A stretch of DNA of 57,065 bases. Source: Octopus bimaculoides (lineage: Eukaryota). The stretch is from contig NC_068982.1 of the NCBI RefSeq assembly GCF_001194135.2, positions 10,216,466 through 10,273,530 of the forward strand, given 5' to 3'. Shown here in pieces: positions 3,951 to 56,888 of this stretch (within the stretch, counting starts at the first letter, position 1; the number at the start of each line of letters is the position of its first letter). Made by a program: the position numbers and the translations under genes. The notes beneath the pieces were generated by a model, which saw only the letters and a list, made by a program, of their open reading frames with translations, was not told the DNA's origin and ran no database searches.

Positions 3951-4228
3951 TATCCCTTTTGTGCATCAGATACTTGGTTGATATTTCCTGTTATGTATGT
4001 ATGTATGTATGCATGCATGTATCAATTTATCTATCTATCTTGATATATATATATATATATATGAGTTAGAGGTTAAGAAACCGTCTAAGGGGCATTAAAT
4101 ATCCAATATACTACTGGATGTGTACCTAATTATTTATAACCAAGTGCTTACTATTGCATGGCAATATCGCAATTGGGTATTAGGTATGGGTGGGGGTAAA
4201 TTAGAAATTTAGCCAGGATTTATAAGGC

Positions 4229-4439
4229 AATAAGAGGATATACAATCGACAAACATCAGCCAGTAAACATTCAATTATATCTATTTTATTAAATGATTAC
4301 GAACATATGTGTGAGTGATACAAATTAACGAATGAAATAAGTCAATAACTGCGTAAACTGCATATTTGTAATCATTCAATAAATAGATATAATTGAATGT
4401 TTACTGGCTGATGATTGTCGATTGTATATCCTCTCTATT
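4229..4439. other. Foldback inverted repeat, ~75-bp arms, ~50-bp loop
   Basis: agaggatatacaatcgacaa.catcagccagtaaacattcaattatatctattt (from 4233) is the reverse complement of 4380-4434; pairing extends inward to ~4309/4361. Confidence 0.9.
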
Positions 4440-4602
4440 TTCTTATTTCCCATATACATACATACATATATATNNNNNNNNNNNNNNNNNNNNNNNNNNN
4501 NNNNNNNNNNNNNNNNNNNNNNNNNNNNNNNNNNNNNNNNNNNNNNNNNNNNNNNNNNNNNNNNNNNNNNNNNNNNNNNNNNNNNNNNNNNNNNNNNNNN
4601 NN

Positions 4603-4652
<50 letters not shown>

Positions 4653-5008
4653 TGTATGTATGTATGTATGTATGTATGTATGTACGTATGTGTGTTTGTG
4701 TGTGCGTGTGATTGTGTGTGTGTATCTAGATGTATATGTATATGTATGTATGTTTGCAATGTTTGCAGTCGTGTACGCTTGTCAAGAGAGCACGACTTAT
4801 TCGCCACCAACGGAACCGCAAATGCAAACTATAAGTAAGTCTCAGAGCGCACAATGTTCCTGAAGGTCAGCAATGGTCTTCCACGGCCACGAGTGGACGG
4901 CCATCATGTATGTCTGTATGCACGTACGAACTTAAGGTTAGTTAACATATGTCGCAAACATATTTTAAATTAGAAATGACACAGAGAGACTTAAGCAGCA
5001 GTGATGCA

Positions 5009-5412
5009 ATAAAGTAGTTGTATACCGTCAACTTAACGTGACAGTCCCAATAAGGGAATCATACTAATGCTATTTAGCCCTAGGAAGCTGGAACGCTTTC
5101 TGTCGGCCTTGACACATTTTTCTTGTGTCTTTATGTGTCCTTAGAATTATTATATGTTTACGAGAGCTAGACAGGCATCTTCAGCCAGCAAGTCATGCTA
5201 CTCCAGGCTGATGACGAGCAAAAACTCAGAAATATGTCCCTGGATGCAGGCTTGGCTGAGTGGAGGTGCTTGTCTCCTCCTCGTAAACATAAGGACACAG
5301 GAAATGTGTCAAGGCCGACAGGAAGCGGTCCAGCGTCCTAGGGCTAAATAGCAGTAGTATGATTCCCTTATTGGGACTGTCACGTTAAGTTGACGGTATA
5401 TAACTGCTTTAT
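5009..5412 (+). other. 404-nt rod-like foldback with apical hammerhead
   Basis: 5009-5136 pairs with 5287-5412 (46-bp perfect run); further helices 5153-5164/5280-5291, 5169-5180/5264-5275 and 5181-5187/5253-5259 lead to the HHR. Confidence 0.9.
5202..5244 (+). ncRNA. Minimal type-I hammerhead ribozyme
   Basis: UCCAGG CUGAUGA C GAG-CAAAAA-CUC A GAAA UAUG UC CCUGGA: intact core, 6-bp stem I, GUC cleavage triplet at 5236-5238; AUAUGU is self-complementary with G-U pairs. Confidence 0.75.
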
Positions 5413-5711
5413 ATTTTAAATTGTAAAAGGGAAAATTATTGCCGCTAATGTGGATATAAAATCCTCATTTAAAGTAAAATGTGCAAAAGCATCTTATCTG
5501 CTCAATGCTTTCTTCTAGCGGATGCCCAGACTCGCGTTTCTGGCTCGTTAACCTTCCTCGATGGGAAATACTGAGAGATTACTCCGGGCAGATTATACAC
5601 TCACACACACACCACACCACACTTACAACTTTGCATGTATGTATGTATGTATGTATGTAGGTATATATGTGTGGGTCTCAAAAATCGAGTGTAACCTGTT
5701 TCAGAGCCCTG
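5408..5711 (+). repeat. Copy 1 of a ~305-bp inverted duplication (partner 13232-13543)
   Basis: Reverse-complement identical to 13232-13543 on manual comparison except an 8-bp microsatellite length difference. Confidence 0.92.
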
Positions 5712-6629
5712 CTCGTTAAGGAAAATTTAACTTGATCGATTACCGGCTAATGTAATCGATAATGAAGACAACAATATACCACTCATTCTGAGGTTCATTC
5801 AAATGATCTTTTAACAAAAGATATAAACATGAAAGAGTGATTCATTGAAGAAATTAAATACACAACTAACACAAGATGAATTTACATCGAAATCTGAAAT
5901 TCCGTAATCTCTAATGTATTGAAATTGTAAGAACAACTTGAATACATTCGGCTTTTTAACTCTGATTGTTTGTAAACACGAAGCACTGACTACTGTCATT
6001 TTAACTCTATACCAAAGCAGAAGCTTCCTGATTCACTTTATTCATAACAAATCAAATAAACGTTTAATTTTACGCTACATTTCTTCAAATATTTACTTTA
6101 CTCAGAAAAAAAAGTTAAGCAATTAATTTACTTGGATATGCAATTAACCGATCAATTTTACATTGATTTCATGTTAAATGTCTTTTGAAAAACGATGATA
6201 TGCAATTAACAGGAATTATTTAAGTATATCCGTTATGCTATTAAGTTGAATANNNNNNNNNNNNNNNNNNNNNNNNNNNNNNNNNNNNNNNNNNNNNNNN
6301 NNNNNNNNNNNNNNNNNNNNNNNNNNNNNNNNNNNNNNNNNNNNNNNNNNNNNNNNNNNNNNNNNNNNNNNNNNNNNNNNNNNNNNNNNNNNNNNNNNNN
6401 NNNNNNNNNNNNNNNNNNNNNNNNNNNNNNNNNNNNNNNNNNNNNNNNNNNNNNNNNNNNNNNNNNNNNNNNNNNNNNNNNNNNNNNNNNNNNNNNNNNN
6501 ATATAAATTAAAAGGGTAAAGGATTATTGCCTTTGTGAGTTACAAGTAATGCTATCTGTCGGAGTCTCAGCTTTTTTAGCTGCTATTTCTGAACTTCGGT
6601 ATGTGGTGAAGCAAATATTTGCTGATCCC

Positions 6630-6669
<40 letters not shown>

Positions 6670-6675
<6 letters not shown>

Positions 6676-6865
6676 GGACAAATCGAAAATTAAAAAAAAA
6701 GAACGAGAGTCAAAAGAACGTACACATAGGATGTATTAGCTTGTCGCTCAATATAAGATGGAAAAAAGAGTGGGTGCATAACGTTTCGAGTACGGCTCTT
6801 CGTCAGAAAGAAGAGAAAGGAAAGATCCGGAGAGGGAAAATAATCCCCCAAAACGCACTTGGGTG
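6670..6865 (-). mobile_element. Short HHR-like repeat, family F, (TA)n-tailed
   Basis: Reverse complement has CUGACGA A GAG-CCGUA-CUC GAAA CG UU (6774-6812), then gagcg...aatacatc...(TA)n, as in 7765-7915. Confidence 0.55.
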
Positions 6866-6983
6866 GTTACATGTATGTATGTATGTATGTATGTATGTAT
6901 GTATGTATGTATGTATGTATGTATGCATGTATCTGTGCGTGTGTATGTGTGTGTATATGTATGTATTCATGTATGTATGTATG

Positions 6984-7400
6984 TACATTTGTATTTTCCT
7001 TGGATTACGAATGTACGAATATACGAACGATTATCTAACGAACAAATTAAAAACGAACTTTTTTTCTTGCTAAAATATTAAACTTGCATAACGAGCAGAA
7101 ATTTGGTCAACGAACAACGAGCAGAATGCACAGGCGTAATAGTGACAGGGAACCCATTCGCTTAGCGAGTTGAATTTTGAACAACAAATCACCCGTAGGC
7201 TACACATGCTTATAATTGCCAGCAGAACATTTACGAATAGGACGCTAAATGAATAAATTGTATAGGGAACAGTTTTTTCTGACGAAAATCATAATCAGTT
7301 AACGAGCTGAAATTTGAACATCAATCTACGAAGAGACAACGCATGCATATAAGTGGCTGGGAGAGTGCGTACAAACGATTCGTTAACGTCCAAATAGGCA
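6984..7400. mobile_element. Possible pogo/Tigger-like non-autonomous element, left part
   Basis: Multiple (T)AACGAAC/AACGAGC subterminal repeats; the same motifs recur at 9560-9655, which ends ctccactg-TA. Confidence 0.4.
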
Positions 7401-7764
7401 TTTCATTTAGCTTGCAAATTTTCATGTCGTATATAGTGAATAATAATATTTGTCATAATTTTGGCCAGAAATATAACCACGGACCAACAGGAGCAAAGCA
7501 AAAGGAATACCGCACACATTCAAGCATACACACGCGTATATATGTACACACACACACGCACGCATATCGTCAATATGTATCAGATATCCGATTAAGAAAC
7601 ACACTTTAAAGTATATAGTAATGTATTAATATGTAGTTAAGTCTACGTCCGGTCACAGAGTGACCAATGGTTTCGCATCCATAAAGGGCCTAGCCCCATA
7701 TATACAGCTACCTCTGTCCAGCCAGCTGCTATGATTAACCGCTAGCTCCAAAAGTTTTTAATTC

Positions 7765-7911
7765 TCTCTCTGTTTATTTGCTCGTGTTCCTATCTGTTGA
7801 AGAGCGTAGGCTCGAAACGTAAAAGACTTTCTCACCTTCACGAGCGTTAACCAAATACATCTGTTTGTTGTTTATACACCTGTTTTCGTCTTTTGTTATT
7901 CTGTAAATTTC

Positions 7912-7915
<4 letters not shown>
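7765..7915 (+). mobile_element. Short HHR-like repeat, family F, (TA)n-tailed
   Basis: CUGUUGA A GAGC-GUAG-GCUC GAAA CG UA AAAGA (7789-7826); core A6 replaced by U; ends in (TA)n. Confidence 0.55.
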
Positions 7916-7963
<48 letters not shown>

Positions 7964-8053
7964 GCACACACACACACACACACACAGATTTTTGAAGTGA
8001 TGTACAGATTTAATATATTAAGAAAAAGGAGATAGTCAGAATTTTGGATAATT

Positions 8054-8100
8054 CTTTATTAACGCTTTCGTCCCATTCCTGGAGACTCCTCAGATATAAG
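8054..8100 (-). ncRNA. Minimal type-I hammerhead ribozyme, family E
   Basis: CUUAUAU CUGAGGA GUCUC-CAGGAAU-GGGAC GAAA GCGU UA AUAAAG; lies in a ~106-bp repeat (8020-8126) about 89% identical to 9307-9412. Confidence 0.75.
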
Positions 8101-8539
8101 TTTTACAGAAAATTTCTTAGCCTTTTGAAAGTGAAAAAAGTTATGGACACTGCTTTACATAATTAATTAATATAGGTACCTAACCGAGCTAACTATTTTG
8201 GGAGAATACGGCTGGAGTGAAATAACCAAATGCGAGTAGTTGAATACTCGAGTTTAAGCCTCTCCAAGCGTACAATTCTGAATGAAATTAATCACAATTG
8301 GAGCGAGAGTATGTTTCCATTTTAAATTGGACTCGGAGATTTTGGATTTCTTTCGTATGTTATAATCGTAAATGAACTCGCTTGGGAATCACTTTTTCAA
8401 TCGTCAACTAACGCTCAAAATACCTTGATCGTATAAAATATATATGTATACATACAGATCTGTGTACGTGTGTGTGTATGTGCGCGCGCGTGTATATGTG
8501 CGTGTGATTGTACATACGCTATGAATGTATATATGCTAT

Positions 8540-8810
8540 GTGTTCCAAACTGGTAATGCAAATTCCAAGTGTGGACGTATTATTGTCGTATACAATTTTA
8601 AATAGATAGCTACCAAGTGGCTGACAAAGGTCTTAATGATTGATGCTAGCAACCGCTCAGCCTTCTTGACAACCTTAGAGATGTGGTTTGTCCATCGCAG
8701 ATCGTTGTTTGCAATGATGCCAAGATTACGTCCGCTAGAAGACTTCTTGAGGAGTGTGTAAAGGATGGGTTTTTCTTCCCAAAATGCATGGTGAAGCACT
8801 TGTCCGCTTT
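8540..8810 (-). mobile_element. CR1-clade LINE RT C-terminal fragment
   Basis: NLGIIANNDLRWTNHISKVVKKAERLLASIIKTF...LKLYTTIIRPHLEFALPVW matches the CR1 pattern DLG....L.W..HI..VV.KA...LY...RP.LE.A..VW. Confidence 0.85.
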
Positions 8811-8865
8811 GCATATTGGATGCTTTGTGTGTGCATAGTGTGTGTACGTATATAATAAGAGAAAG

Positions 8866-8889
8866 GGAGAGAAAGAAAGACAGACAGAC

Positions 8890-8920
<31 letters not shown>

Positions 8921-8930
8921 AGGAAAAAAA

Positions 8931-8975
<45 letters not shown>
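8866..8975. repeat. (GAAA)n / (GACA)n microsatellite
   Basis: Directly visible; a complementary (TTTC)n tract lies at ~9193-9250. Confidence 0.9.
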
Positions 8976-8978
<3 letters not shown>

Positions 8979-9194
8979 CTTTCAAAGACAATGACTAAAT
9001 CAAATTTGACAACTTGAATTGTAATCAAACTTCAACAGGCTGACCACATTGATATATAATACAATTGAAATGACACCCCTTTCTCTGTCTTTCTTTCAGG
9101 TCCTCCTTCCTGTCTTTCTTTCACCCTTTCTTTAAACTGTCATGTTGAAATGTCATTAACACCTGTGAAAAAGTTGCAAATCACAATTCTTTTT

Positions 9195-9250
<56 letters not shown>

Positions 9251-9331
9251 ACACACACATGTAGATAACAAGACAGCAAAAAAATAATCTATTTTACATT
9301 TGTATGAAAGGTAAAGAAATTTTCTGTAAAA

Positions 9332-9378
9332 CTTGTATCTGAGGAGTCTCTGTGAATGAGACGAAAGCGCTAATAAAG
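9332..9378 (+). ncRNA. Minimal type-I hammerhead ribozyme, family E
   Basis: CUUGUAU CUGAGGA GUCUC-UGUGAAU-GAGAC GAAA GCGC UA AUAAAG: intact core, perfect 5-bp stem II, palindrome AGCGCU, CUA cleavage site after 9372; the element ends in (AC)n. Confidence 0.82.
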
Positions 9379-9410
9379 AATTATCCAGAATTCTAACTAC
9401 TTCCTTTTTC

Positions 9411-9463
<53 letters not shown>

Positions 9464-9559
9464 GCGCGCGCTTATATTTGTTGTTGACAGATTGACAAAC
9501 ATAGCTTTAGTTCATGCCATTTATGTAGCTTAAAGAATTATCCCTAATTATGTGTATAC

Positions 9560-9655
9560 CAATTACTCGTGTAACGAACGGTTTGGTTAACGAACGGTTT
9601 GGCTAACGAACAGGACTCCATAACGAATTGTGTTCATTTGCAGAAGCTCCACTGT
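9560..9655. mobile_element. Possible pogo/Tigger-like right end
   Basis: taacgaacggtttgg repeats and terminus gcagaagctccactg followed by TA. Confidence 0.45.
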
Positions 9656-10464
9656 AGTCGGTTTTATATATTTTCCTTTTATCTAAAATATATCGATGTA
9701 AAATAAAATTTAAAAAAAAAACAACTAAAATATACATTGTGATTTGTTTTTATTAAAATATGTTGTGAAAAACTTCGTTATGCAATTATATGTATTAGAC
9801 ACACACTAATTGTACTCTTCATTTTGATGAAAAAATGACTGGACATTTACGGCTCTTACTAATATGTATAAAAAATTCTTATCTTTGTACCTTCTGTTTT
9901 TCTATCCGAACTCCACCATCTTCTATAAAATCAGATATCGTGCAAAGAAAAAATATCTTAAATGGTTGGCTGACATTTTGTAAATTTTCATTCTTGATAT
10001 TTGATATATTTTCTCTTTTTTTTGTTTGTTTTGCAGTAAAGTACTGTTATGGCGTCATGTAATTAGTGTTCTTTCAAATATTAATATCTGATATAGACAC
10101 AACAACTCAAACTTGCTGTACAAAAAATGCAGATTATATTTATCTCTGCTTTTGTATTATGTTTTATCGACCCAAAACTTCGAAACACGCAGCTGACCTC
10201 GGCAAAGTTTGGCCTAAGAATGTAAATGGCAGCAAGAAAACACTAAGCAAATTCATTGAACAAGCGTTCAATTATATTTTACATAAAAATATTGGTCAGA
10301 TTTTGTAATGAAACACGAAGGAACCTTGATATGATAATTGAGCAACGGTTTAGAACAGTTTTTCTCTGAGCGAATGCATACAAAGCTGTAGCCACGCATA
10401 GAGGGACACAAAGACACACAGACACACAGCCAGACAGACAGATGTGCACAGATATGTATCTCTA

Positions 10465-10561
<97 letters not shown>

Positions 10562-11009
10562 TATTATTTTATGTGTATTAATATTATCTCAGTTATTGAA
10601 ACTTTCGATAATTTGAATACGTTAATAGTTACCATGGGTAGCAAAATTACGCTAAAAAACAAGATATCCCAGCCGTTTTACAGGTTGATATACCGAGTTA
10701 ACGTGATACATTTTGAGAATATATGGGTAATAACAACACATGGAGTAAAACGCATGTCGATGAAAGTTCCTGTAATTCCTACATATATGTTTCGAAGCAA
10801 GTGAGGGCCATTTCGCAAAAAAAGGGGCCATTACCCCCCAAAAAGGGGGTAGCTGGAATTATCACTTGTTTCTCATCAGGGAGAACATGTTTTATTATGA
10901 TGGGACATGCCGAACAGACCTAAACCTTCACCAACCTTTTCGCAAACAGTTTAAACGTTTCATAAATAAATGTGTCGCAAAAGCATTCATTATTCTGGGT
11001 TTACCAGGG

Positions 11010-11300
11010 ATTACATAAACCAAAATCATGACCGAGCGCTGTCTTGTGTAAGACGAATCCAAATTGAACCGGCTCGTATCTATAAGCTGGAAAAGGCCTC
11101 ATGGTGGTCCTCGCACCAGATGGCTGGACGTAATTAAGGAAGATATCTAGAGACTTGATGTCACCTTTGAGCATGCGGAGGGGCTGGAACGGGACAGTCA
11201 ACGATGGTGGTCATTGGTGGACCTGGTTGGCTCAACGCATGATGACGTCTCTGCGACCGCTAACCTGGGGCAAACCCCAGCCACATTGAGCAATAGCAGA
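11010..11300 (+). mobile_element. RTE-clade LINE 3' fragment
   Basis: WKRPHGGPRTRWLDVI matches the RTE C-terminal W.RP.GRP...W.D motif; followed by a (GA)-rich tail. Confidence 0.7.
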
Positions 11301-11313
11301 GCAGAGAGAGAGA

Positions 11314-11426
11314 GAGAGTGAGAGAGAGAAACGGAAAGAGAGTGAGAGAGAGAAACGGAAAGAGAGTGAGAGAGAGAAACGGAAAGAGAGTGAGAGAGAG
11401 AAACGGAAAGAGAGTGAGAGAGAGAG
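11314..11426. repeat. 24-bp minisatellite, ~4.5 copies
   Basis: Unit gagagtgagagagagaaacggaaa repeated perfectly within a (GA)n tract. Confidence 0.9.
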
Positions 11427-12553
11427 CTAAAAAGATTTGCAGCTGATTTTAGACCACTGTAAATAGGGGGGAGTGATATGATCTGAAGAGGATTCTCGGT
11501 TCAAAATTCTGATCCTGTTTAATGCAACACCATTACCACAGTTAAAGATGTATACAAAAGTATCTTGAGAAACGTTTCTCTTACCAAGTCGAATGACGAG
11601 TTGTCGTTCAAAGGGACCATAATTCATAACAACGACCACAAATATACCGCATGTTCACTGAAAATCATTTCGAATATTAAAAAAAAAAGAATGTTCGTCT
11701 AATGTCCTGGCTTGTTGAATCCCCTGACCTCATTTCGATCGAAATATCTGAAATGAAGTCGATGATGACATCAAAGCTTAGAAACCGAATCTGTTCAACG
11801 TGATCAAAGAAGCACGGGAACAAATTCCCATTTCTCGTTGCCAGCGCTTGATTGATTCCATGCATCACAGATGTTACAAAATCATTCAGAGAAAATGATA
11901 GCACACTGAATATTGACCTGTGAATATAATTTCAAAAACCGTTGTGTGCAATAATGTTAATATTTACATTTCTGATTCAAAATATCTGGCGCCTTGAATT
12001 CTACACGCATAATTAAAATGAAAGCGCATTGAAATAAAAGAAAGATAACCTAACGAATAACTAATCTTTTTTTTTTTCTGAAAACGTAATGAAAAATTAA
12101 AGGCTTTAGTTTATCCATTTGCTCCGCAAGGCATGAAATTATACTAATGCTAGCGATTTACTAAACCATTCTGAACATAAAGCGAACACTACTTAATAAT
12201 CTACATGATACACAACCGCTGCAGCTATTTGTCTGACATAGTTTTTCTGGGTTATAGTTGTTGAAACACTGATACTAACCGACTATAACAAGAGATTACC
12301 AACGGAGCAAGGTAAAACCTCGAAATCAGCGCATTTTCGTTTTGACGTTTCAAAGTGTCTTTTGACATAAGCATTAAGCTCGTAGCGAATTAATATTACA
12401 TCTTTTAAATGCTTCTGTCAGAAATCGTTTTTAAATGCACAAATGGAGCTATTTAAATGCTCGGTAAATCACATGGTATTTAGTTGGAGACGATTCTTTT
12501 TGTCGTGGCCACGCAATTCAGCGGCTAATAACGACTTTTACTGACAAATACGG

Positions 12554-12607
<54 letters not shown>

Positions 12608-13187
12608 GTCTGTCTGTCTGTCTGTCTGTCTATTTATAAGTGTGCTATACTTACGAATACACGCGCACACACACACTCTTATATATGCTTCACGAGAATA
12701 AGAAACCTCAATTCAATACCGAAGAGTACAATTATTTATTTACTAACTATCTGTAGATTCAGGAACGGCTGTTTGCATCACAACTACGTCATTCTGTGTT
12801 CAATATCACTGCGCAATATTTCAGGCAAATGTCTTTAAATATATTCTCGTTATGACCGATAATTTGTGAGTGAAATCTGCAGCCTTTTGTTGTGCCTATA
12901 TACAAATAGCACATCGTCACCATTCGCAATTGAGTATAACTTAGTATCAGCGTGCGCCATGCCTTTTGCTTGTGTTTCATAAGTTTCCATGCACATTCGT
13001 AGCAGATACAAACACACTCTGGACAACCGCCCTCTTAATCGTCCAAGGTGTAACAGCTGAAAGAGAGAAAGTTATATCCAAACACTTGCTTCCACTTTAT
13101 TTTATCGATGTCTGAAGAAGGGGGTGGCAGAGATATTCTGAGTTCCCTATCTCTGATCGAGCTATATTATTTGAGTTATCTACCCAT

Positions 13188-13231
13188 AGGCGCAGGCGTG
13201 GCTGTGTGGTAAATAGTTTGCTTACCAACCA
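13188..13231 (+). mobile_element. SINE type C head, truncated
   Basis: ggcgcaggcgtggctgtgtggtaaatagtttgcttaccaaccac matches the heads at 50340-50395 and 45810-45870; broken at the inverted-duplication junction. Confidence 0.75.
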
Positions 13232-13543
13232 CAGGGCTCTGAAACAGGTTACACTCGATTTTTGAGACCCACACATATATACCTACATACCTACATACAT
13301 ACATACATACATACATGCAAAGTTGTAAGTGTGGTGTGGTGTGTGTGTGAGTGTATAATCTGCCCGGAGTAATCTCTCAGTATTTCCCATCGAGGAAGGT
13401 TAACGAGCCAGAAACGCGAGTCTGGGCATCCGCTAGAAGAAAGCATTGAGCAGATAAGATGCTTTTGCACATTTTACTTTAAATGAGGATTTTATATCCA
13501 CATTAGCGGCAATAATTTTCCCTTTTACAATTTAAAATATAAA
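13232..13543 (-). repeat. Copy 2 of the inverted duplication (partner 5408-5711)
   Basis: Reverse complement of 5408-5711 with 8 extra microsatellite bases. Confidence 0.92.
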
Positions 13544-14230
13544 AGCATAAAAGAATATGCCAATGTCTACCGTGCGCACTTAAGTGAAGAAGACAAGCGC
13601 TTGGGAGAAATAGTGAACCGGTTTGGGTTTACACATCCATCATACTCTGCAGTTTCGCATAGCTAGTAGACTGCCGGTTTCTCCTTGCCAAGTGAAGACG
13701 GTAAGTTGATCTTCACTATGGAAACGTATACGGTAACACACATTTGATTTCATTCCACAAGCGAACGTTCGCAGGCGATAAGCGAGAGCACGGATAAGAG
13801 TTTCTCCATTTTACTCCTCACAGTTATAAACCTGAAAGATTTCTGGAAATATCTGTTCAGCATATGTTTAACAAAACCTGGGAATGTCCTTGTTTAAAAC
13901 AAAAGGCATAGGTGGACGTTCAACTAACTGCATTGCTCAACATGTAGAGAGTATGACAATCTGGCGAAACTTTAGATGCGCTGCCTCCATACTTCTACAA
14001 TTTGTATAGAATTGCAGTTCATTGACAGAGCCTCGTTTTCTGATAAACAACAATCATATAACGTCTAAGAATTTTTACAGATGTCGAAGCCTTGCACATA
14101 CCTAGATATCAGCAAGTGGTCTGAGAGAAACCTATCTTAGAATATTTCGCCAAAATAATCTTATAATCTATTTCTTTATGGGATCGGTCACCCTAGTTAC
14201 CGCTTCATATTTACTATCGAGTTCTTTTAA

Positions 14231-14910: not shown

Positions 14911-16085
14911 CAGGGGTTGGACAAAATAACGAAAACACCTAGCATCATCGCATCATAATTTTGAAATATCTATAAAACCGTCAAAAGCTTGTTTATTTTT
15001 ATGTCTTTTGAATTACTATTAGTGTTGCTTAATAGCCTAATATGTTTTGCTAAAATTGCTGTTTCTTTTCAGTCATTATCAGCAAAAGGTAATTAAAATT
15101 CATTAAAATGACAGATCTATCGGACTTTCAAAGAAGTCAAATTGTTAGTGCTCGTATGGTAGTCGCTAGCGTAACGAAAACAGTCGAAATGTTTGGTGTA
15201 TCAAGAAGTACTGTCTTGAAAGTAATGACAGCCTTTGAGAAAGAGGGAAAAAACCTCCTCGTCGAAACAAAACTCCGGAAGANNNNNNNNNNGTACTGTC
15301 TTGAAAGTAATGACAGCCTTTGAGAAAGAGGGAAAAAACCTCCTCGTCGAAACAAAACTCCGGAAGAAAACCAAAACTTTCAGATAGTGACCGTCGGACT
15401 CTTACGCGAACTGTTAGAAAGGATAACAAAAGTACAGCTCCCAGAATTATTGCAGAGTCATCCTTTACCTTATTTCCAAGCACCACCGGCCGAGTATACG
15501 TGTGGAGACAGCCAAAAGAAGCATTTGACCCAGACTGCCTTCTTCCAATTGTTAAACATGGAGGAGGAACTGTGATGATCTGGGAGACTATATCTTGGAA
15601 ATCTGCCGGCCCAATGGCTTCCCTTCATGGCAGAATTAATAGTCAAGATTATTTAAGCATTTTATCTGATCAAATTCATCCTATGGTTGCGAAACTGTTT
15701 CCAGAGGGAAGCACAATCTTTCAGGTTGATAATGTACCAATTCACACCGCTAAAGTTGTTACTAAATGGCACGAGGAGCATTCTAGTGAAGTTGAACATC
15801 TTATCTGACCACCACAGTCCCCAGATCTCAATATTATTGAACATTTATGGTGCATTTTAGAAAAACAAGTAAGGAGTAGATATCCTCTACCATCATCACT
15901 ACAAGAACTGGAGACTGTTCGAGCTGAAGAATGAGCAAAAATTCCTTTGGAAACATTTCAAACTTTGTACGAGTCCATACCTTGTAGAATTCAAGCTGTA
16001 ATTACTGCCAAAAGCGGTCCTACCCCATATTAAAATAAATTTGTTTGAAATTTTAAGGTGTTTCCATTATTTTGTCCAACTCCTG
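14911..16085 (+). mobile_element. Tc1-family DNA transposon, DD36E-type, defective
   Basis: TA flanks; 30-bp TIRs (caggggttggacaaaataacgaaaacacct, 3 mismatches); transposase from ATG 15108 with HGGGTVMIW, FQVD and SPDLNIIE; internal deletion and stop codons. Confidence 0.95.
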
Positions 16086-17365
16086 TATTTCGTGTTTATT
16101 TGAAACAGAATTACTTAGTAAGATTGTGTGCTACATATAATATCGGTTACTGGTTACATGTTTTCATTTAGAAAATAATTGCTGGTGTTGGTGGTAAAAA
16201 AATTGTGATAGAAATTTGAAATGCTACGTTGTACTACAAATGTTATATCCGTTATAGATATCTAACAATATATTTACAAAGTAAATTTGAGTTCTTTTTG
16301 TGTGCTTTCCAACAGTGTACCAAACTACCTTTATTGTTATCTCACGGAAATAAGAAACTATTATTATGTTGAACAAAATCGCATAATAACATATCATAGT
16401 TTTGAACATAGTTGTACTTAATAAACATTTCTATAACGATTTTTAAAATGGAACATCTCCCTTACTGTAAAATATTTTTTCGTATAATTATTCAATTGCT
16501 ATCTTTGGAGATTGGCTAGTAGAAAACACGATAAAAGAAAAAACAATTTAAACAAACGTAAAGAAATCAAATAATTGAAGAAATGTTCACATGCTAAAGA
16601 CTAGTTCCACCAATCAAAGATTGTGATTCTCCGAGGATAATTATTTTCCACCCATTTATAGAAATGATATTTCTATTCTGAGAAAAATTTCAATTTTATT
16701 GTTCAGTCAATCGTTGGAACAAAGGCTCAATTATCCTCTTTGTTTCTGAGTTAATTGCTTCATCAATAGATGCTGTCCAAAATAATAGTTTACATTCTTT
16801 GTGATACGATATCACCTGATTTTGCTTTAAAGCGAGAAGTATTTCTTCTAACCTCTCTCACAATGAATCTGAATGATTTCGGTTAAACAGTTCTCAAATC
16901 GGGTAATATTTTCTTTTATATTCCCAAATGGTTTATTTTTCATTAAAACTTTTTTATGTTTGAAGTTTAATCAATTTTCTGTTCTTTCTAATTTTAACAG
17001 ATTTAGAGGATAAACCAATTTCTTTATGAATAACTACAGCAAAATATTAAATTTCCAATATTCATAAAAACATTCAAAATATTCATTATAGTACCTTTTA
17101 TTTTTCTTTGACGCGTTAAAAAGAAAGTAAATTATAAATATGAAATAATAAATTGGATATTGGAAGAATAATAAATGTGCAAAAGTATAAAAGCAGCAGT
17201 CAATGCGAGCTCAACTACATTTCCCCAAGGGATTTCAACCCTAAATTTATGACTCAAAGATATTAACAATAGAATTACCAAAGATATTTGATATTACTTT
17301 TAGATATTTATGTATGGTTTGATATCATTCTCCCTCAAAGATGTTGATATTATAGACATTGTCTA

Positions 17366-34038: not shown

Positions 34039-35904
34039 ATTTATCATCTCTTAATTTTGAATTTTTCATAAGATTACTCCATTGCAGATTTCCTGTTTGG
34101 TATTTTGTTTATCGAGTCCCTGGAGGATGGGAAGTTAAGCTGACAACGGCGGGATTCGAATTTACAACGCAAAGAGGAGTAAGGACTTACACTGCAATAT
34201 TTTCTACCTGGCCTTTTTACCGCTCTAGCAGTTCGCCGCCATCTGTAAAATGTGACCTTCAGTGATATTGGCAGGTCAATTCTGTAACAATGAGGAACAA
34301 TATATAGTTGACAAATATTTCTTTTTACTTGCGTAGCTGTTAGATTGGGGAATTGTTTTAGATTTCTTCAGGCTGATTTGCTTTAGACACACCGGTGAAA
34401 ATTCTGGTAATGAACCCTGGCGTGCGCGCAGTAGAATCTAGTTATGTCGCTTGCACTCTTTACATTCTAAATTACTGACATGCTCGCTGTTACTTCTTAT
34501 TAGCAACATGAAAAATAATAGCGCCCTTCACACACAAACACAATCACACACACACGCACACAAACACACACATACACATGCATACTCATACACACTGGCG
34601 TCATTCAGAAGCAACATCTGACGCCTAACACAAGCTAATATATGAACAAATGTATTGAAAACAATTTGAATTGACATCTACAGCACCACGACACAATCAC
34701 TTGAACACAAATTTTAACTTTCTCAACATCAATCTCACCAGACTTGGAGGTCTACGAATAGCGACCATTCCTCTTATTTAGACTAAATAAGGATTTAGAT
34801 AGCCTATCAGACTAAATAATAATATTGCTGAAAAAATGTTAGCACGTTAATAAGTAGGGCATGGTATTTTCATTTTATGTCATGTTCAAAGATTGTATCA
34901 AATATTATTTGCTATTCTATAAAATACACCGTTAATACATTTGAGATAATTCTAGATATCAAGCGATTGCACTTGCCGTCGTTACAAAATATGAGGTAGA
35001 ATGCTCGATCGAGAAATTAGTAATTTTTTTTCTTTTGTTTTTATTTTCTTTTATCTAATCTACTTAAATTCTTTATAGCTGTTTCCTTGTATTTTAGTTT
35101 CTCTAACAACAACCATGCCGACAACGACTACAACAACAACAGTGAAGACGACAACGACCATACTAACAATAACAACAGCAACAACGATGTTGACAGCAAA
35201 AACAACAATTTTTTTTTTTGATCGGTATATCTATTTTATTTTAAGTAAGTTTGTTTACCGAAACAAATTTTGCTCGAATGCAAAGTTTCATCGACCTATC
35301 TTCCTGTATCTGGCGTCAACAACTAACTTCAATTCAACTGACCAATATCATTTCTTGACCTAATCGATAGAGGACAAAAAAACACAAATTTGGTTGGAGG
35401 AAGTACTGAACAATCTACACTACTTAACCGATTGTTCGAGCGATTTTAAGATTTCAAATAACTAAACTCTTAATTTACTGGACAGATTGAAATAGTTGTA
35501 AGTTTAACATATACAGACAGCTAACATTTCGCTTTTGGATTTGGTTTGCAAGATTCTTTATATGAGTTCGTGTGTTGAAGCATATTCTATTGTGTCTGGG
35601 AAGAGTCATTTTCTTTCTGTGCCTTATAATTTAACACACTCACCGGTAAAATTTCCACTTATTTCTTATTTTTATTTTCCTAAAATTTTCGTTGCGTTTT
35701 GCAACCTTTTCAATAGAGTCAAGACTATTGAAAAGGTTGCAAGACTCAACGAAAAGTTTAGGAAAATAAAAATAAGGAATAAGGAATAAGAGCAGGTACA
35801 GTTGTTATCATCCAATGGATCAATCTAGAATATTACTTCTACATTTTATTGACTTCCCGAATATGAATCTTAATGACGGCTTTCACCATCTGTCTATTCC
35901 ACTG

Positions 35905-36245
35905 CCATCTTTTAATATTGATCGCAAAGTTTGGTACAAGGTCTGCAATTTCTGGGGAGGAGGTGAGTCGATTGTATAGACCCCAGTACGTGACTGGTAC
36001 AGTACTGTTTCTTATTTCTTTACTGCCCACAGGGGGCTAAACATAGAGTGAACAAACAAGGACAGACAAAGGGATTAAGTCGATTATATCGACCCCAGTG
36101 CGTAACTGGTACTTATTTAATCGACCCTGAAAGGATGAAAGGCAAAGTCGACCTCAGTGGAACTTGAACTCAGAACGTAATGACAGACGAAATGCCACTA
36201 AGCATTTCGTCCGGCATGCTAACGTTTCTGCCAGTTCGCCGCCTC
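35905..36245 (-). mobile_element. SINE type B: full long-tail copy plus adjacent 3' fragment
   Basis: Complete element at ~36017-36245 with the tttgtctgtccttgtttg...gggcagtaaag tail; tail fragment at 35905-36003. Confidence 0.85.
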
Positions 36246-38434: not shown

Positions 38435-38600
38435 AGCAGCGAGCTGGCAGAATCGTTAGCACGTCGGTCTAAATGCTTTGCAGCATTTCGTCCGTCTTTA
38501 TGCTCCGAGGTCGACTTTTCTTTTCATTTTTTCGGGGTCGATAAAATGAGTATCAGTTGAGCACTGGTGTCGATATAATCGACTTAACACTTCCCCCAGG
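38435..38600 (+). mobile_element. SINE type B, degenerate
   Basis: gcagcgagctggcagaatcgttagcacg...ggggtcgataaaatgagtatcag. Confidence 0.8.
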
Positions 38601-54659: not shown

Positions 54660-54872
54660 GGCGGCGACCTGGCAGAAACGTCAGCACGCCGGGCGAAATG
54701 CTTAGCGGTATTTCGTTTGTCTTTACGTTTTGAGTTCAAATTTCGCCGCGGTCGACTTTACCTTTCGTCCTTTCGGAGTCGATAAATTAAGTACCATTTG
54801 CGTATTGAGGTCGATCTAGTCGACTGGCCCCCTCCCCAAAAATCTCGGGCCTTGTTCCTAGAGTACAAAAGA
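54660..54872 (+). mobile_element. SINE type B, full short-tail copy
   Basis: ggcggcgacctggcagaaacg...gggccttgttcctagagtacaaaag. Confidence 0.9.
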
Positions 54873-55262
54873 ATATACAGTACAACGATGGGGATTTGTA
54901 TTTTTGCTAGAAACCAGCTCCTTCCTCCGAGGACGAATTTAAATAATTAAAAGCAGAAGAGAACATACATACATACATACACACACACACATACATACAT
55001 ACATACATACGTACATACGTACGTACATACATACATACATACATTATAAATGCCAAATAAATATCAATGCATTTCATTGAAAAACAGAATGTGTACATCT
55101 AATAATTTTTTTCAGAGTAAACAGTTTATAACAAGTAATCAACGTCTATGTAACAGGTTGGCGTATCATTAATCAATCCCTTCTTCCTTTCTCGCCCTTT
55201 ACATTCCTACATTCACAGTATTTTAGATAAATAATTTTTAAAATGCAACAACTTTAAAATAA

Positions 55263-55294
<32 letters not shown>

Positions 55295-55599
55295 ACATAA
55301 AAGTATTACGCATTATATATGTGGGTCTATGTCTGTCTGTCTGTATGTATGTATGTAAGAATGCATGTGTGCACATGTGTGCTCGCACACATGGCAGTTA
55401 CTCTACATGTTTATTACCAGACTATACCTTTTTAACAGATACCAAATTATTGGTTTTATCTGATTGTCACATATTGTTTATATTTTATATTTTATATTTT
55501 CACAAAATATTAGCGTTTTCGTTGCTTTTGCTATTATTATGGTAATTAACGTTTCAGAAGCAATAAAACAATTGAAGCGATTGATGATGTTCGATATAA

Positions 55600-56590
55600 A
55601 TCAGAATGAAAAATTGAAACTTTCTGCTGTTAGTGAATTTGTGACTGTCTGGTGGAGATCGCATCGCAGGAATTTATGATCGCATGTAAAATTTGTACCA
55701 GTAAGAATTGTATAAACTCGGCTGGTTTAAATTTCAGTAAACCACCTGAAAGAGATTGGGAGAAAATATCCCTTGAAGACGAATCGCAGAAGAACCTCCG
55801 AAGGAAACGCCATTGCTTCTGGATTAGCTTATAAACAAAATCAACGAAACTAATGAACGACGCGGGAGATGACACACAGTGTGGTAATTTATTTGGCCAT
55901 TTGATTGAATCATTCAGGTGAATACTCGCAGCTCTCAAGTAAGAGGTGATTCCAGAAATAAAGGAAAGAAGTAGGAGATATTTTAAGGAACGCCTGAAGT
56001 TCATGCATGAGAAGTGGAACCTCTTCAAGCGGTGTTTAATAACCAGTTGTGAAAGATCCATCGCTACGACTCGAAGACGAAAGAACAATCGAAGCCTTAA
56101 AAGCATAAACATTCTCTGCCATCCGAGAGATTCAAAGTCGGATCCAGTTCAGGAGGCAAGATCATATGGCTGCACGACTACGACTCTGAGAGTGTGGTCT
56201 TTAATGATTATCTGCAACAGAACACAATACTCACAGGTGCCAAATATTCTGATTTGTAAAACTGTGTCGCAACAGAGTGCTTTGGAATGTTGAGTGCCAT
56301 TTTCCTGAGTTTTCATAACAATGCACCAATTCCTAGGGATCGAGTGTCAAAGACTGCTATTTGTGAACGTTTCTTTCGGACAGGTTATGTAGCAAAATTT
56401 GTTCTTTATGTGTCCAAATTTGAAGCACCAATTCAAAAACAGACAATTCTCCTGCGCTGAAAAGAATGCAATCGAATATAATGCAACAGTTCTTCGCGTA
56501 GAACAAATAGTTCTGAATAAATGGTGTTGAGCAGTTGCAACAAGGATACAAAAGTATCTTTTAGTTCACAATGACTTTGTTGAAAAATGT
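55600..56590 (+). mobile_element. Highly degenerate mariner transposase pseudogene
   Basis: SLEDE (HTH end), HRYDSKTKEQSK, RFKVGSSSGGK...DYLQQNT, FHNNAP, FFMCPNLKHQFKNRQFS and DFVEK occur in mariner order across frameshifts; TIRs not seen. Confidence 0.75.
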
Positions 56591-56659
56591 CTGTATTTGT
56601 CGAAAAGCTAAATAACATTAATTTACTGTCTTCCTACTGTCATGCAAGTATATTTATTT

Positions 56660-56888
56660 ATTTCTTGCGCACAGGGGGGCTAAACATAGATGGGACAAAC
56701 AAGGACAGACAAATGGATTAAGTCGTTTACATCGATCCCAGTGCGTAACTGGTACTTATTTAATCGACTCCGAAAGGATGAAAGGCAAAGTCGACCTCGG
56801 CGGAATTTGAACTCAGGACGTGACACTAGACGAAATACCGCTAAGCATTTCACCTGGCGTGCCAACCGATTTTGCCAGCTCGCTGCCA
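56660..56888 (-). mobile_element. SINE type B, full long-tail copy
   Basis: Colinear with 36017-36245. Confidence 0.9.

What the first reader, a model, noticed from the sequence alone, without database searches (positions are those of the whole stretch)
5009..5412. A 404-nt RNA rod capped by a hammerhead ribozyme at its exact apex
Seen: 128-nt and 126-nt arms pair, with a 46-bp perfect run. Three further helices continue inward, and the innermost helix is stem I (UCCAGG/CCUGGA) of a type-I hammerhead with an intact CUGAUGA...GAAA core and a GUC site at 5236-5238. Established: minimal type-I HHRs occur in Penelope-like element LTRs and retrozymes, and rod-like folds with HHRs typify viroid-like RNAs. 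Inference: this is a non-coding, self-cleaving foldback retroelement or an endogenised viroid-like RNA. Cleavage would open the loop of a long dsRNA that is also a candidate Dicer/ADAR substrate. I do not recognise this architecture as a named family. Caveats: the base of stem II is a C-A mismatch, and only one HHR is present whereas retrozymes usually have two.
Basis: partly seen in the sequence, partly recalled or inferred. Interest (0 to 1): 0.92.

Follow-up and report, generated by a model that had tools for sequence, protein, structure and literature searches.

The report
Hammerhead ribozyme inside inverted retroelement insertion
A genuine hammerhead ribozyme motif sits at the centre of a 404-base inverted repeat, but the whole thing looks like the usual head-to-head insertion scar left by a Penelope-like retroelement fragment, not a new viroid-like RNA, so it is a neat but ordinary relic.

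Summary
Positions 5009-5412 form a near-perfect foldback (outer arms 111 nt, 95% complementary, with a 46-bp perfect run). At its centre is a complete type-I hammerhead (5202-5244, cut after C5238). The motif is not chance: it shares the loop-1 and loop-2 signature of 16 canonical animal hammerheads that I fetched from metagenomes. It still fails Rfam's gathering score.

Four features match the published insertion signature of Penelope-like elements (PLEs) and their non-coding hammerhead derivatives:
- a 12-nt target-site duplication (4960-4971 / 5411-5422, p about 1e-4 to 6e-4);
- a 37-nt non-palindromic stretch on one side only (4972-5008);
- strand-symmetric, near-perfect outer arms;
- an imperfect inner helix, rich in G-U pairs, that folds well only as plus-strand RNA.

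In that signature a 5'-truncated copy lies next to an inverted 5'-truncated copy, head to head. There is a palindrome at the junction, a short duplication, and an optional 30-40 bp "tail" at one end.

So the "rod" is most likely two copies of one 3' end, joined at the ribozyme's own hairpin. It has one ribozyme, no reading frame and no second copy in the window, and is probably dead on arrival. I could not identify the source genome or find other copies. Confidence is about 0.55.

The parts
4960..4971 (.). Left copy of the target-site duplication (12 nt exact; 15 of 17 if extended to 4976)
   Evidence: Direct-repeat family D3. A repeat this long in this geometry arose in 3 of 20000 Markov simulations and at 11 of 18248 real-sequence control positions.
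4972..5008 (-). 37-nt non-palindromic stretch between the duplication and the left arm. Read as the optional 'tail' at the 3' end of the inverted copy (32 nt if the duplication is 17 nt).
   Evidence: It pairs with nothing in the element and has no other copy in the window. The length fits the 30-40 bp one-sided tail of PLE insertions (PMC3846280, PMC8557442, PMC11167929). The assignment is an inference.
5009..5116 (-). Left outer arm. Read as the inverted, more severely 5'-truncated copy of the element's 3' end.
   Evidence: 102 of 108 positions are complementary to 5305-5412 with no indel. Part of inverted repeat I1.
5117..5164 (.). Junction zone. Four indels (2, 6, 4 and 11 nt, left arm longer) lie between perfectly matching blocks. 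The join between the inverted and direct copies lies somewhere here.
   Evidence: Arm-to-arm alignment. Complementarity drops sharply inward of about 5165 / 5279.
5165..5201 (+). 5' strand of the extension of helix I, ending in the three unpaired bases UAC (5199-5201) of internal loop 1
   Evidence: Pairs imperfectly with 5245-5279, with four G-U pairs on the plus strand. 5165-5279 folds at z -4.1 as plus-strand RNA but z -1.4 as minus-strand RNA.
5202..5244 (+). Type-I hammerhead ribozyme motif: stem I 5202-5207 / 5239-5244, core 5208-5214, helix II plus loop 2 5215-5228, GAAA 5229-5232, minimal helix III 5233-5237, predicted cut after C5238
   Evidence: Sequence. Descriptor scan. Hammerhead_HH9 25.3 bits, below threshold. 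Own model from 16 metagenome hammerheads 44.7 bits, partly circular. 6 of 8 conserved columns outside the search pattern agree.
5245..5304 (+). 3' strand of the extended helix I (inner, imperfect part of the right arm)
5305..5410 (+). Right outer arm. Read as the 3'-terminal part of the direct copy, ending at the target-site duplication.
   Evidence: The palindrome runs 2 nt further (5411-5412) into the duplication, which a 1-in-16 chance allows.
5411..5422 (.). Right copy of the target-site duplication
5405..5711 (+). Flank that is duplicated in inverted orientation at 13232-13547. Not part of the element, but it starts 6 nt inside the element's right end and so dates that duplication after the insertion.
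   Evidence: No significant homology upstream of the breakpoint.

Best explanation
This is one old, non-coding, dead-on-arrival insertion of 439 bp (4972-5410), made by target-primed reverse transcription of a hammerhead-bearing retroelement RNA. The source was either the terminal repeat (pLTR) of a Penelope-like element or one of its non-autonomous 'non-LTR retrozyme' derivatives.

As is usual for this class, two 5'-truncated DNA copies of the same 3' end were laid down head to head:
- A direct copy runs from somewhere in 5117-5165 to 5410. It keeps the ribozyme and the natural, imperfect extension of its helix I.
- An inverted, shorter copy (5009 to the junction) carries the optional 37-nt tail at its outer end (4972-5008).

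The two copies were joined at the only self-complementary part of the template, which is the ribozyme's own hairpin. That is why the foldback is exactly in register with stem I and the ribozyme ends up at the apex. A 12-bp target-site duplication flanks the whole.

What is shown: the anatomy, the duplication, the strand asymmetry of the inner helix and the ribozyme signature. What is inferred: the mode of joining (both-strand priming with annealing at the palindrome, or snap-back of the first DNA strand) and the identity of the enzyme.

Functional expectation (inference). With a single ribozyme, a one-base-pair helix III and a non-canonical closing pair in helix II, self-cleavage of a monomer should be weak. 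No circle can form. A read-through transcript would be a hairpin dsRNA of about 190 bp that could feed small-RNA or editing pathways.
For: 1. Direct repeat of 12 nt at 4960-4971 / 5411-5422. The right copy abuts the arm and the left copy lies 37 nt outside it. The p value is about 1.5e-4 to 6e-4.
2. [quoted passage not shown]
3. PMC3846280 describes inverted plus direct pLTRs head to head, palindromes at the inverted junction and duplications of 8-10 bp. PMC11167929 shows a PLE protein cleaving and extending both target strands and starting reverse transcription at two adjacent sites that bound the tail.
4. Complementarity is heterogeneous. The outer 108 nt have 6 substitutions and no indel. 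The inner 37-45 nt are about 72% complementary.
5. The inner domain is an RNA helix only on the ribozyme strand (z -4.1 against -1.4; -80.1 against -66.5 kcal/mol for 5117-5304). Among the arm mismatches, 6 are G-U type on the plus strand and 1 on the minus strand.
6. The hammerhead is of the canonical animal type. It has a 6-bp stem I, a UAC/U internal loop 1, the same 6-nt loop 2 as 16 metagenome hammerheads, and a 1-bp helix III with a self-pairing loop. Nine motifs in eight of the 19 loci scanned pass Rfam Hammerhead_1.
7. G+C is 44% and the duplication is longer than 4 bp, as stated for non-LTR retrozymes (PMC7229834).
8. The flank duplication at 13232-13547 includes the last 6 nt of the element plus the right duplication copy. 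The element was therefore already in place as a unit ending at 5410.
Against: - No second copy of any part of the element was found, so the family, its ends and its junction variability are unknown. Searched: the window, IMG/VR, JGI metagenomes, prokaryotic genomes (one chance 20-mer) and proteins.
- No PLE reverse transcriptase or GIY-YIG endonuclease is in the window. The source organism could not be identified.
- The tail is assigned from its length and position only.
- Four indels cluster in 5117-5152, which a simple two-copy model does not predict unless that zone is natural helix or junction filler.
- None of 19 other canonical hammerhead loci has an inverted repeat centred on the ribozyme, so the arrangement is not common for this ribozyme type.
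- Published metazoan PLEs carry mostly 'minimal' hammerheads with a long helix II (PMC4209133). This one is of the canonical retrozyme type.
- In one metagenome contig (L013) a canonical hammerhead lies next to a LINE-type, not a PLE-type, reverse transcriptase.
Confidence: 0.55

Rival explanations
1. Natural rod. The 404-439 nt unit is a unit-length DNA copy of a rod-shaped hammerhead circular RNA (a retrozyme or viroid-like RNA). Its arms were already complementary in the RNA, and the copy opened at the loop opposite the ribozyme (4972-5008).
For: A type-I hammerhead with an open stem I necessarily caps one end of a rod. Retrozyme circles of 170-400 nt are described as highly self-paired (PMC7229834). 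The duplication fits retro-insertion. G-U bias favours the plus strand.
Against: Comparable hammerhead loci fold at only -0.18 to -0.32 kcal/mol per nt, against -0.55 here. The outer 108 nt lack any bulge and include a 46-bp perfect run, while the inner part is a typical imperfect RNA helix. That step change is unexpected for one evolved rod. There is a single ribozyme, no tandem copy and no ribozyme of the other polarity.
Confidence: 0.15
2. Foldback/MITE. A non-autonomous DNA transposon with terminal inverted repeats of about 110-130 bp that carries, or captured, a hammerhead in its centre.
For: Long inverted repeats are common in this window: 4222-4446, 35658-35783, 54684-56862 and others. 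The arms are flanked by TA on both sides, which a Tc1/mariner-type duplication would give. A Tc1-like transposase remnant lies at about 14914-16091.
Against: A TA next to a palindrome is weak evidence. The significant 12-nt repeat lies 37 nt outside the left arm, which a cut-and-paste element does not explain. The arms do not match the Tc1-like copy or anything else in the window. The repeat is exactly in register with the ribozyme's stem I, and the inner helix is strand-asymmetric.
Confidence: 0.12
3. Local inverted duplication. An old solo hammerhead unit was made palindromic by a replication or repair template switch at its hairpin, with no transposition involved.
For: Hairpins provoke such events. 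A second, very recent inverted duplication has a breakpoint at the base of this same hairpin (5405).
Against: It predicts no target-site duplication and no one-sided extra stretch.
Confidence: 0.08
4. Chance motif or assembly artefact.
For: Rfam gathering scores are not reached. The assembly is a gapped draft, and PLE-type inverted structures are known to trouble short-read assemblies (PMC8557442).
Against: The descriptor gives 0 hits in 400 random windows with a full stem I. 6 of 8 independent conserved columns agree. The arms differ by 6 substitutions and 4 indels, unlike a chimeric read palindrome.
Confidence: 0.03

Closest known systems
Penelope-like element insertions with inverted plus direct pLTRs (Arkhipova et al. 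2013, PMC3846280; Craig et al. 2021, PMC8557442; PMC11167929)
   Same: Copies of the same 3' end lie head to head with their 3' ends outward. There is a palindrome at the inverted junction, a short target-site duplication (8-10 bp reported, 12 bp here), an optional 30-40 bp tail at one end only (37 nt here), and a hammerhead in the repeat.
   Different: There is no reverse transcriptase/endonuclease reading frame between or near the repeats and no direct pLTR pair. The hammerhead is of the canonical type rather than the 'minimal' type usual in metazoan PLEs. Homology to any PLE could not be tested.
Non-LTR retrozymes of animals (Cervera and de la Pena 2020, PMC7229834; Li et al. 2026 preprint, 10.64898/2026.07.22.740005)
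   Same: Both have a canonical type-I hammerhead with a 6-bp stem I, a 4-position helix II and a very short helix III with a self-pairing loop. Unit size is in the 170-450 nt range, G+C is below 50% and the duplication is longer than 4 bp. Dispersed monomers are reported to be common and to be non-mobile offspring.
   Different: Retrozymes are defined by direct tandem repeats with a ribozyme in each unit. Here there is one ribozyme and the repeat is inverted.
Axolotl and newt satellite hammerheads (HHR_Amex1 and HHR_Amex2, PMC7229834)
   Same: HHR_Amex1 has a single-base-pair helix III with a palindromic loop. HHR_Amex2 has a mismatch at the base of helix II. Both cleave poorly as monomers (6% and 22% in 1 h) and well as dimers.
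   Different: The sequence and the host are different. Here no second ribozyme is nearby to form a dimer, and the dimer helix III would be weak (-0.8 kcal/mol).
L1 twin priming (inversion during LINE insertion; from general knowledge)
   Same: Two primings on opposite target strands give an internal inversion flanked by one target-site duplication.
   Different: Twin priming joins adjacent, largely non-overlapping parts of the RNA. It does not give two copies of the same 3' end, so it does not produce a long foldback, and it leaves a poly(A) tail. Neither feature is seen here.
Hammerhead viroid-like and delta-like circular RNAs
   Same: A rod-like fold with a hammerhead.
   Different: Those carry ribozymes in both polarities and rods interrupted by frequent bulges. 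Here there is one polarity only, and the outer arms have a 46-bp perfect run and no bulge over 108 nt.

Membership tests
Hammerhead ribozyme, type I (Rfam RF00163 / clan CL00010) | Conserved core (CUGANGA ... GAAA ... cleavage triplet ending in H) in the right order around three helices, with stem I open | tested here: met
   Sequence 5202-5244. It is the only descriptor hit in the window.
Hammerhead ribozyme, type I (Rfam RF00163 / clan CL00010) | Score at or above the curated gathering threshold | tested here: not met
   No match at gathering score. The best clan match is HH9 at 25.3 bits against 52, and it is lost in a wider search. Comparable metagenome motifs score 38.8-51.4 bits against 34.
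Hammerhead ribozyme, type I (Rfam RF00163 / clan CL00010) | Standard closing pair of helix II (positions 10.1-11.1) | tested here: not met
   The pair is non-canonical in the window. 15 of 16 comparison sequences can form a standard or wobble pair there and 1 of 16 cannot. An active axolotl family also has a mismatch there (PMC7229834).
Hammerhead ribozyme, type I (Rfam RF00163 / clan CL00010) | Loop 1 / loop 2 signature of canonical animal hammerheads | tested here: met
   The internal loop (3 nt / 1 nt) and the 6-nt loop 2 are identical to those of 16 metagenome hammerheads. 6 of 8 conserved columns outside the search pattern agree.
Hammerhead ribozyme, type I (Rfam RF00163 / clan CL00010) | Self-cleavage | not testable with these tools
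   No expression or read-end data are available.
Penelope-like element (insertion signature) | Reading frame with reverse transcriptase and GIY-YIG endonuclease | tested here: not met
   No such frame is in the element. Pfam on 78 open frames of the window finds one RVT_1 (most likely the LINE-like frame at 8539-8994), one zf-RVT and no GIY-YIG.
Penelope-like element (insertion signature) | Inverted 5'-truncated copy adjacent to a direct copy, head to head, with a palindrome at the junction | tested here: met
   read against PMC3846280 and PMC8557442.
Penelope-like element (insertion signature) | Optional 30-40 bp tail at one end only | tested here: inconclusive
   A 37-nt one-sided stretch is present. 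That it continues the element's 3' end cannot be shown without other copies.
Penelope-like element (insertion signature) | Short target-site duplication flanking the whole insert | tested here: met
   12 nt, p about 1.5e-4 to 6e-4.
Penelope-like element (insertion signature) | Sequence homology of the repeat to the pLTR of an autonomous PLE in the same genome | not testable with these tools
   The source genome is not available, and no relatives are in the searchable collections.
Non-LTR retrozyme | Direct tandem repeats of 150-450 bp, each with a type-I hammerhead | tested here: not met
   There is one ribozyme and no direct repeat of the unit. Monomeric derivatives are, however, reported as common (10.64898/2026.07.22.740005).
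Non-LTR retrozyme | Low G+C (below 50%), duplications longer than 4 bp, no LTR / primer-binding site / polypurine tract, no coding capacity | tested here: met
   G+C is 44.4%. The duplication is 12 nt. No tRNA-like or other RNA motif is present. The longest frame has no protein homologue.
Non-LTR retrozyme | Expressed as circular RNA | not testable with these tools
   No transcript data. A single ribozyme cannot release a unit.
MITE / foldback DNA transposon | Terminal inverted repeats directly flanked by a short fixed-length duplication; many copies | tested here: inconclusive
   A TA on both sides is compatible. The only statistically supported repeat lies 37 nt outside the left arm. Copy number cannot be tested.
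Viroid-like / delta-like circular RNA | Ribozymes in both polarities on a quasi-rod | tested here: not met
   No ribozyme is on the minus strand.

The most novel reading that the evidence does not exclude
The foldback is not an insertion scar. It is the unit of an undescribed family of hairpin hammerhead elements: a transcript that folds into a nearly perfect dsRNA of about 190 bp. Its capping ribozyme opens the loop, giving a two-stranded duplex with a 5'-OH and a cyclic phosphate. That duplex would feed small-RNA production against the parent retroelements, or would be an endogenised rod-shaped RNA replicon.
Probability: 0.08. Interest if true: 0.75.

Novelty: new member of a known kind. Interest (0 to 1): 0.3.

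Why it matters
If the reading is right, this one locus shows a canonical (retrozyme-type) hammerhead unit carrying the full insertion signature of Penelope-like elements: head-to-head copies, a one-sided tail and a short duplication. That is direct structural support for an idea argued so far mainly from co-occurrence and phylogeny, namely that animal retrozymes are moved by the PLE machinery.

It also suggests a simple reason for the 'palindrome at the inverted junction' seen in PLE insertions. The ribozyme's own extended helix I is the self-complementary segment at which the two copies are joined.

For genome scans, the practical lesson is that a near-perfect rod around a hammerhead in DNA is more likely an integration by-product than a viroid-like RNA.

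Tried and rejected
- **Protein route to other copies.** The 65-aa frame across the apex has no homologue. Used as a pseudo-protein, it found no related locus in IMG/VR or in JGI metagenomes.
- **Exact 20-mer from the perfect run.** Nothing was found in IMG/VR. There was one hit in a Waterburya MAG among prokaryotic genomes, about 29 nt long with no further similarity. About one such hit is expected by chance, so I rejected it.
- **Identifying the organism.** The Tc1-like frame hits spiders, an amphipod and unnamed ENA/JGI contigs at up to 81% identity. Two of those contigs share only the Tc1 element with the window. The frame itself is not on record. The LINE-like frame found nothing.
- **Homology between the right arm and the sequence upstream of the second copy of the flank.** Not significant.
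- **PLE genes in the window.** None found.
- **PLE genes next to the metagenome hammerheads.** Only one reverse transcriptase turned up, and it is of LINE type.
- **Other ribozymes, tRNA-like heads or known RNAs in 4900-5750.** None. The microRNA-family matches are below threshold and are generic long-hairpin or microsatellite hits.
- **A larger transposon bounded by the two copies of the flank (5405-13547).** Rejected, because there is no transposase frame inside.
- **My own covariance model.** It scores the motif at 44.7 bits, but its training set was selected with a pattern taken from this motif. I count only the columns outside the pattern.

Full report

Yes. The repeat finder reports arms 5009-5119 and 5302-5412 (111 nt, 95% complementary) and an inner pair 5153-5198 / 5246-5291 (46 nt, 72%). 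BLAST of the region against the window gives 128 nt at 92% with gaps. The perfect run of 46 bp is 5021-5066 / 5355-5400.

The plus strand of 5009-5412 folds at -275.4 kcal/mol, against -109.0 +/- 5.6 for dinucleotide shuffles (z -29.9). The minus strand folds at -247.3 kcal/mol (z -26.3).

- stem I: 5202-5207 / 5239-5244
- CUGAUGA: 5208-5214
- helix II with a 6-nt loop: 5215-5228
- GAAA: 5229-5232
- helix III: a single A-U pair around four bases
- GUC: 5236-5238

**2. Is the hammerhead more than chance?**

A descriptor was set up with these requirements: stem I at least 5 of 6 pairs, CUGANGA, helix II at least 3 of 4 pairs, loop 2 of 3-8 nt, GAAA, 0-10 nt, then U followed by H. It finds this site and no other in the window. 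It finds 0.0125 sites per random window of the same first-order composition, and none in 400 when stem I must be fully paired.

Rfam is not convinced. There is no match at gathering score. The best match is Hammerhead_HH9 at 25.3 bits against a cut-off of 52 when only 221 nt are searched, and nothing for that clan appears when 851 nt are searched.

The HH9 alignment showed that the window's motif shares two things with that family: the three unpaired bases 5' of stem I, and the exact 6-nt loop 2. I used that signature, with all helices left free, as an exact pattern against the metagenome collection and obtained 30 loci.
- 17 loci have a fully formed hammerhead, with stem I at least 5 of 6 pairs and helix II at least 3 of 4 pairs.
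- Three more have a weaker helix II.
- Nine motifs in eight of the 19 loci scanned pass Rfam Hammerhead_1 at 38.8-51.4 bits, and one locus is HH9 itself.

I aligned 16 of these. There are eight invariant or nearly invariant columns that were not part of my pattern, and the window's copy agrees at six. The two that differ lie in the closing pair of helix II and in helix III. At the helix II closing pair, 15 of the 16 can form a standard or wobble pair and one cannot.

A covariance model built from the 16 scores the window's motif at 44.7 bits. Much of that score is circular, because the training set was selected with the motif's own signature.

I conclude that this is a hammerhead by descent, of the canonical animal type. 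PMC4209133 gives the architecture: helix I of 6 bp, helix II of 4 bp, and helix III of 1-2 bp capped by a small palindromic loop. PMC7229834 reports close precedents in axolotl: a one-base-pair helix III, and a mismatch at the base of helix II. Those ribozymes cleave poorly as monomers (6% and 22% in an hour) and well as dimers.

**3. What surrounds it?**

The window is a gapped eukaryotic draft, rich in microsatellites and transposon debris. No second copy of any part of the element is in the window.

(a) A 12-nt direct repeat lies at 4960-4971 and 5411-5422 (15 of 17 if extended). The right copy abuts the right arm. The left copy lies 37 nt outside the left arm. A repeat that long in this geometry arose in 3 of 20000 simulated flanks and at 11 of 18248 real positions of the window.

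(b) The 37 nt between the left repeat and the left arm (4972-5008) pair with nothing.

(c) The flank 5405-5711 recurs, inverted, at 13547-13232. It is identical except for a microsatellite length difference and one base in a T run, and the homology starts 6 nt inside the right arm. Nothing upstream of that point is related. That duplication is therefore younger than the element and copied its last 6 nt, the right repeat copy and the flank. This is consistent with an element that ends at 5410.

**4. The foldback is not uniform.**

Aligning the left arm with the reverse complement of the right arm shows three zones:
- The outer 108 nt have six substitutions and no indel.
- The next 36 nt have four indels between perfect blocks.
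- The 37-45 nt next to the ribozyme are about 72% complementary.

Among the arm mismatches, six are G-U type on the plus strand and one is G-U type on the minus strand.

The inner domain 5165-5279 is a significant hairpin only as plus-strand RNA (-49.9 kcal/mol, z -4.1, 0 of 200 shuffles as good). As minus-strand RNA it is not (-38.6 kcal/mol, z -1.4, 18 of 200). For 5117-5304 the values are -80.1 (z -8.0) and -66.5 (z -5.4).

So the centre looks like an RNA helix selected on the ribozyme strand. The outer arms look like two DNA copies of one sequence that have since diverged by about 5.5%.

**5. Mechanism.**

These features are the published signature of Penelope-like element insertions.
[quoted passage not shown] - PMC8557442 repeats the description: strong 5' truncation, an inverted 5'-truncated copy at the 5' end, and a 30-40 bp tail at either end.
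- PMC11167929 shows that a purified PLE protein cleaves and extends both target strands. It starts reverse transcription at two adjacent internal sites whose spacing corresponds to the tail.
- PMC4209133 places hammerheads in the pLTRs.
- PMC7229834 and the 2026 preprint (10.64898/2026.07.22.740005) describe the non-coding 'non-LTR retrozymes' with canonical type-I hammerheads. They relate them to pLTRs and note that dispersed monomers are common and probably immobile.

My reading is as follows.
- Two DNA copies of the same RNA 3' end were made at one target, with their 3' ends outward.
- The right one (from the junction to 5410) is long enough to include the ribozyme and the natural extension of its helix I.
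- The left one is shorter and began at the outer start site, so it carries the tail.
- Two copies of the same polarity can anneal only at a self-complementary segment, and the ribozyme hairpin is that segment. This explains why the DNA palindrome is exactly in register with stem I.
- A snap-back of one DNA strand at the hairpin would give the same arms, but it explains the one-sided tail less well.

The anatomy is shown. The enzymology is inferred.

**6. What it does now (inference).**

- One ribozyme cannot release a unit, so no circle is expected.
- Monomer cleavage should be weak. Helix III is one pair, the dimer form of helix III would be only -0.8 kcal/mol, and helix II has a non-canonical closing pair.
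- Any transcript through the locus would be a long hairpin dsRNA. Whether it is diced or edited is untested.
- There is no coding capacity.

**7. Rivals.**

- **A natural rod-shaped circular RNA copied once into DNA.** This is the main alternative (0.15). It explains the duplication and the ribozyme at the apex. It does not explain the step change in complementarity, the bulge-free outer 108 nt with its 46-bp perfect run, or the fact that 19 comparable hammerhead loci show no inverted repeat around the ribozyme and fold at only -0.18 to -0.32 kcal/mol per nt, against -0.55 here.
- **A foldback DNA transposon (0.12).** It fits the abundance of inverted repeats in the window and the TA on both sides. 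It does not fit the offset 12-nt repeat or the strand-asymmetric centre.
- **A local template-switch duplication (0.08).** It predicts no duplication of the target.
- **Chance or assembly error (0.03).** This is unlikely given.

**8. Limits.**

I could not identify the organism. I could not find any relative of the arms in the collections open to me. No PLE genes are in the window. Membership in a PLE or retrozyme family therefore rests on architecture alone.

Several points remain unexplained or argue for caution:
- the clustered indels at 5117-5152;
- three same-type transversions between the arms;
- a metagenome contig (L013) in which a canonical hammerhead lies about 100 nt 3' of a LINE-type reverse transcriptase frame, which warns that PLEs may not be the only possible movers.

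**9. Verdict.**

The best explanation is a PLE-type head-to-head insertion of a hammerhead-bearing 3' end (confidence 0.55). It is a new member of a known kind, with interest about 0.3.

The most novel reading not excluded is a dedicated hairpin-plus-ribozyme element or an endogenised rod RNA. I put its probability at about 0.08.

Noticed in passing
window 5405-5711 and 13232-13547: A 307-316 bp segment is present twice in inverted orientation about 7.5 kb apart. The copies are identical except for an 8-nt microsatellite length difference and one base in a T run. One breakpoint sits at the base of the hairpin. This is either a very recent local inverted duplication or an assembly artefact. No transposase frame lies between the copies.
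   Followed up: partly
window 4222-4446: A second foldback of about 225 bp (81% complementary) lies immediately before an assembly gap. It is unrelated in sequence to the hammerhead element, and no clear target-site duplication was seen.
   Followed up: partly
window 35658-35783: A 126-bp palindrome (59-nt arms, 93%, 8-nt spacer). Both arms carry a weak string resembling the U3-A8 variant of minimal PLE hammerheads. The region is AT-rich, so this is probably chance.
   Followed up: partly
window 54684-54825 / 56721-56862; 8020-8125 / 9307-9412; 36075-36155 / 38507-38587: Three inverted-repeat pairs of 81-142 nt enclose 1.2-2.4 kb each. They are candidate transposons or further head-to-head retroelement insertions. 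The open frames that I scanned showed no Pfam domain.
   Followed up: no
window about 14914-16091: A Tc1-like transposase remnant (DDE_3). It is about 80% identical in DNA to two ENA metagenome contigs. The best named protein relatives are in spiders and an amphipod, which hints at an arthropod-like source or at horizontal spread.
   Followed up: partly
window 8536-8991 (minus strand): A LINE-type reverse transcriptase C-terminal fragment fused to low-complexity sequence. The word-indexed protein search found no relative.
   Followed up: partly
L002, L010, L013, L025, L026, L027 (metagenome contigs): Canonical type-I hammerheads with the same loop signature occur as two cores on the same strand, 405-1415 nt apart. 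That is the direct-repeat layout expected of retrozymes, and none sits in an inverted repeat.
   Followed up: partly
L013:521-2146 (minus strand): A canonical hammerhead lies about 100 nt downstream of a LINE-type, not Penelope-type, reverse transcriptase frame on the same strand.
   Followed up: partly
L033:97-127 (Waterburya MAG): A 29-31 nt stretch is 93% identical to the perfect run of the arms, with no further similarity. Judged a chance hit for a 20-mer in 596 Gb.
   Followed up: yes
window-wide: Ten assembly gaps lie in 57 kb. The several whose flanks I looked at adjoin (TA)n, (TATG)n or (CA)n runs, so repeats near gaps may be under-represented or mis-joined.
   Followed up: no
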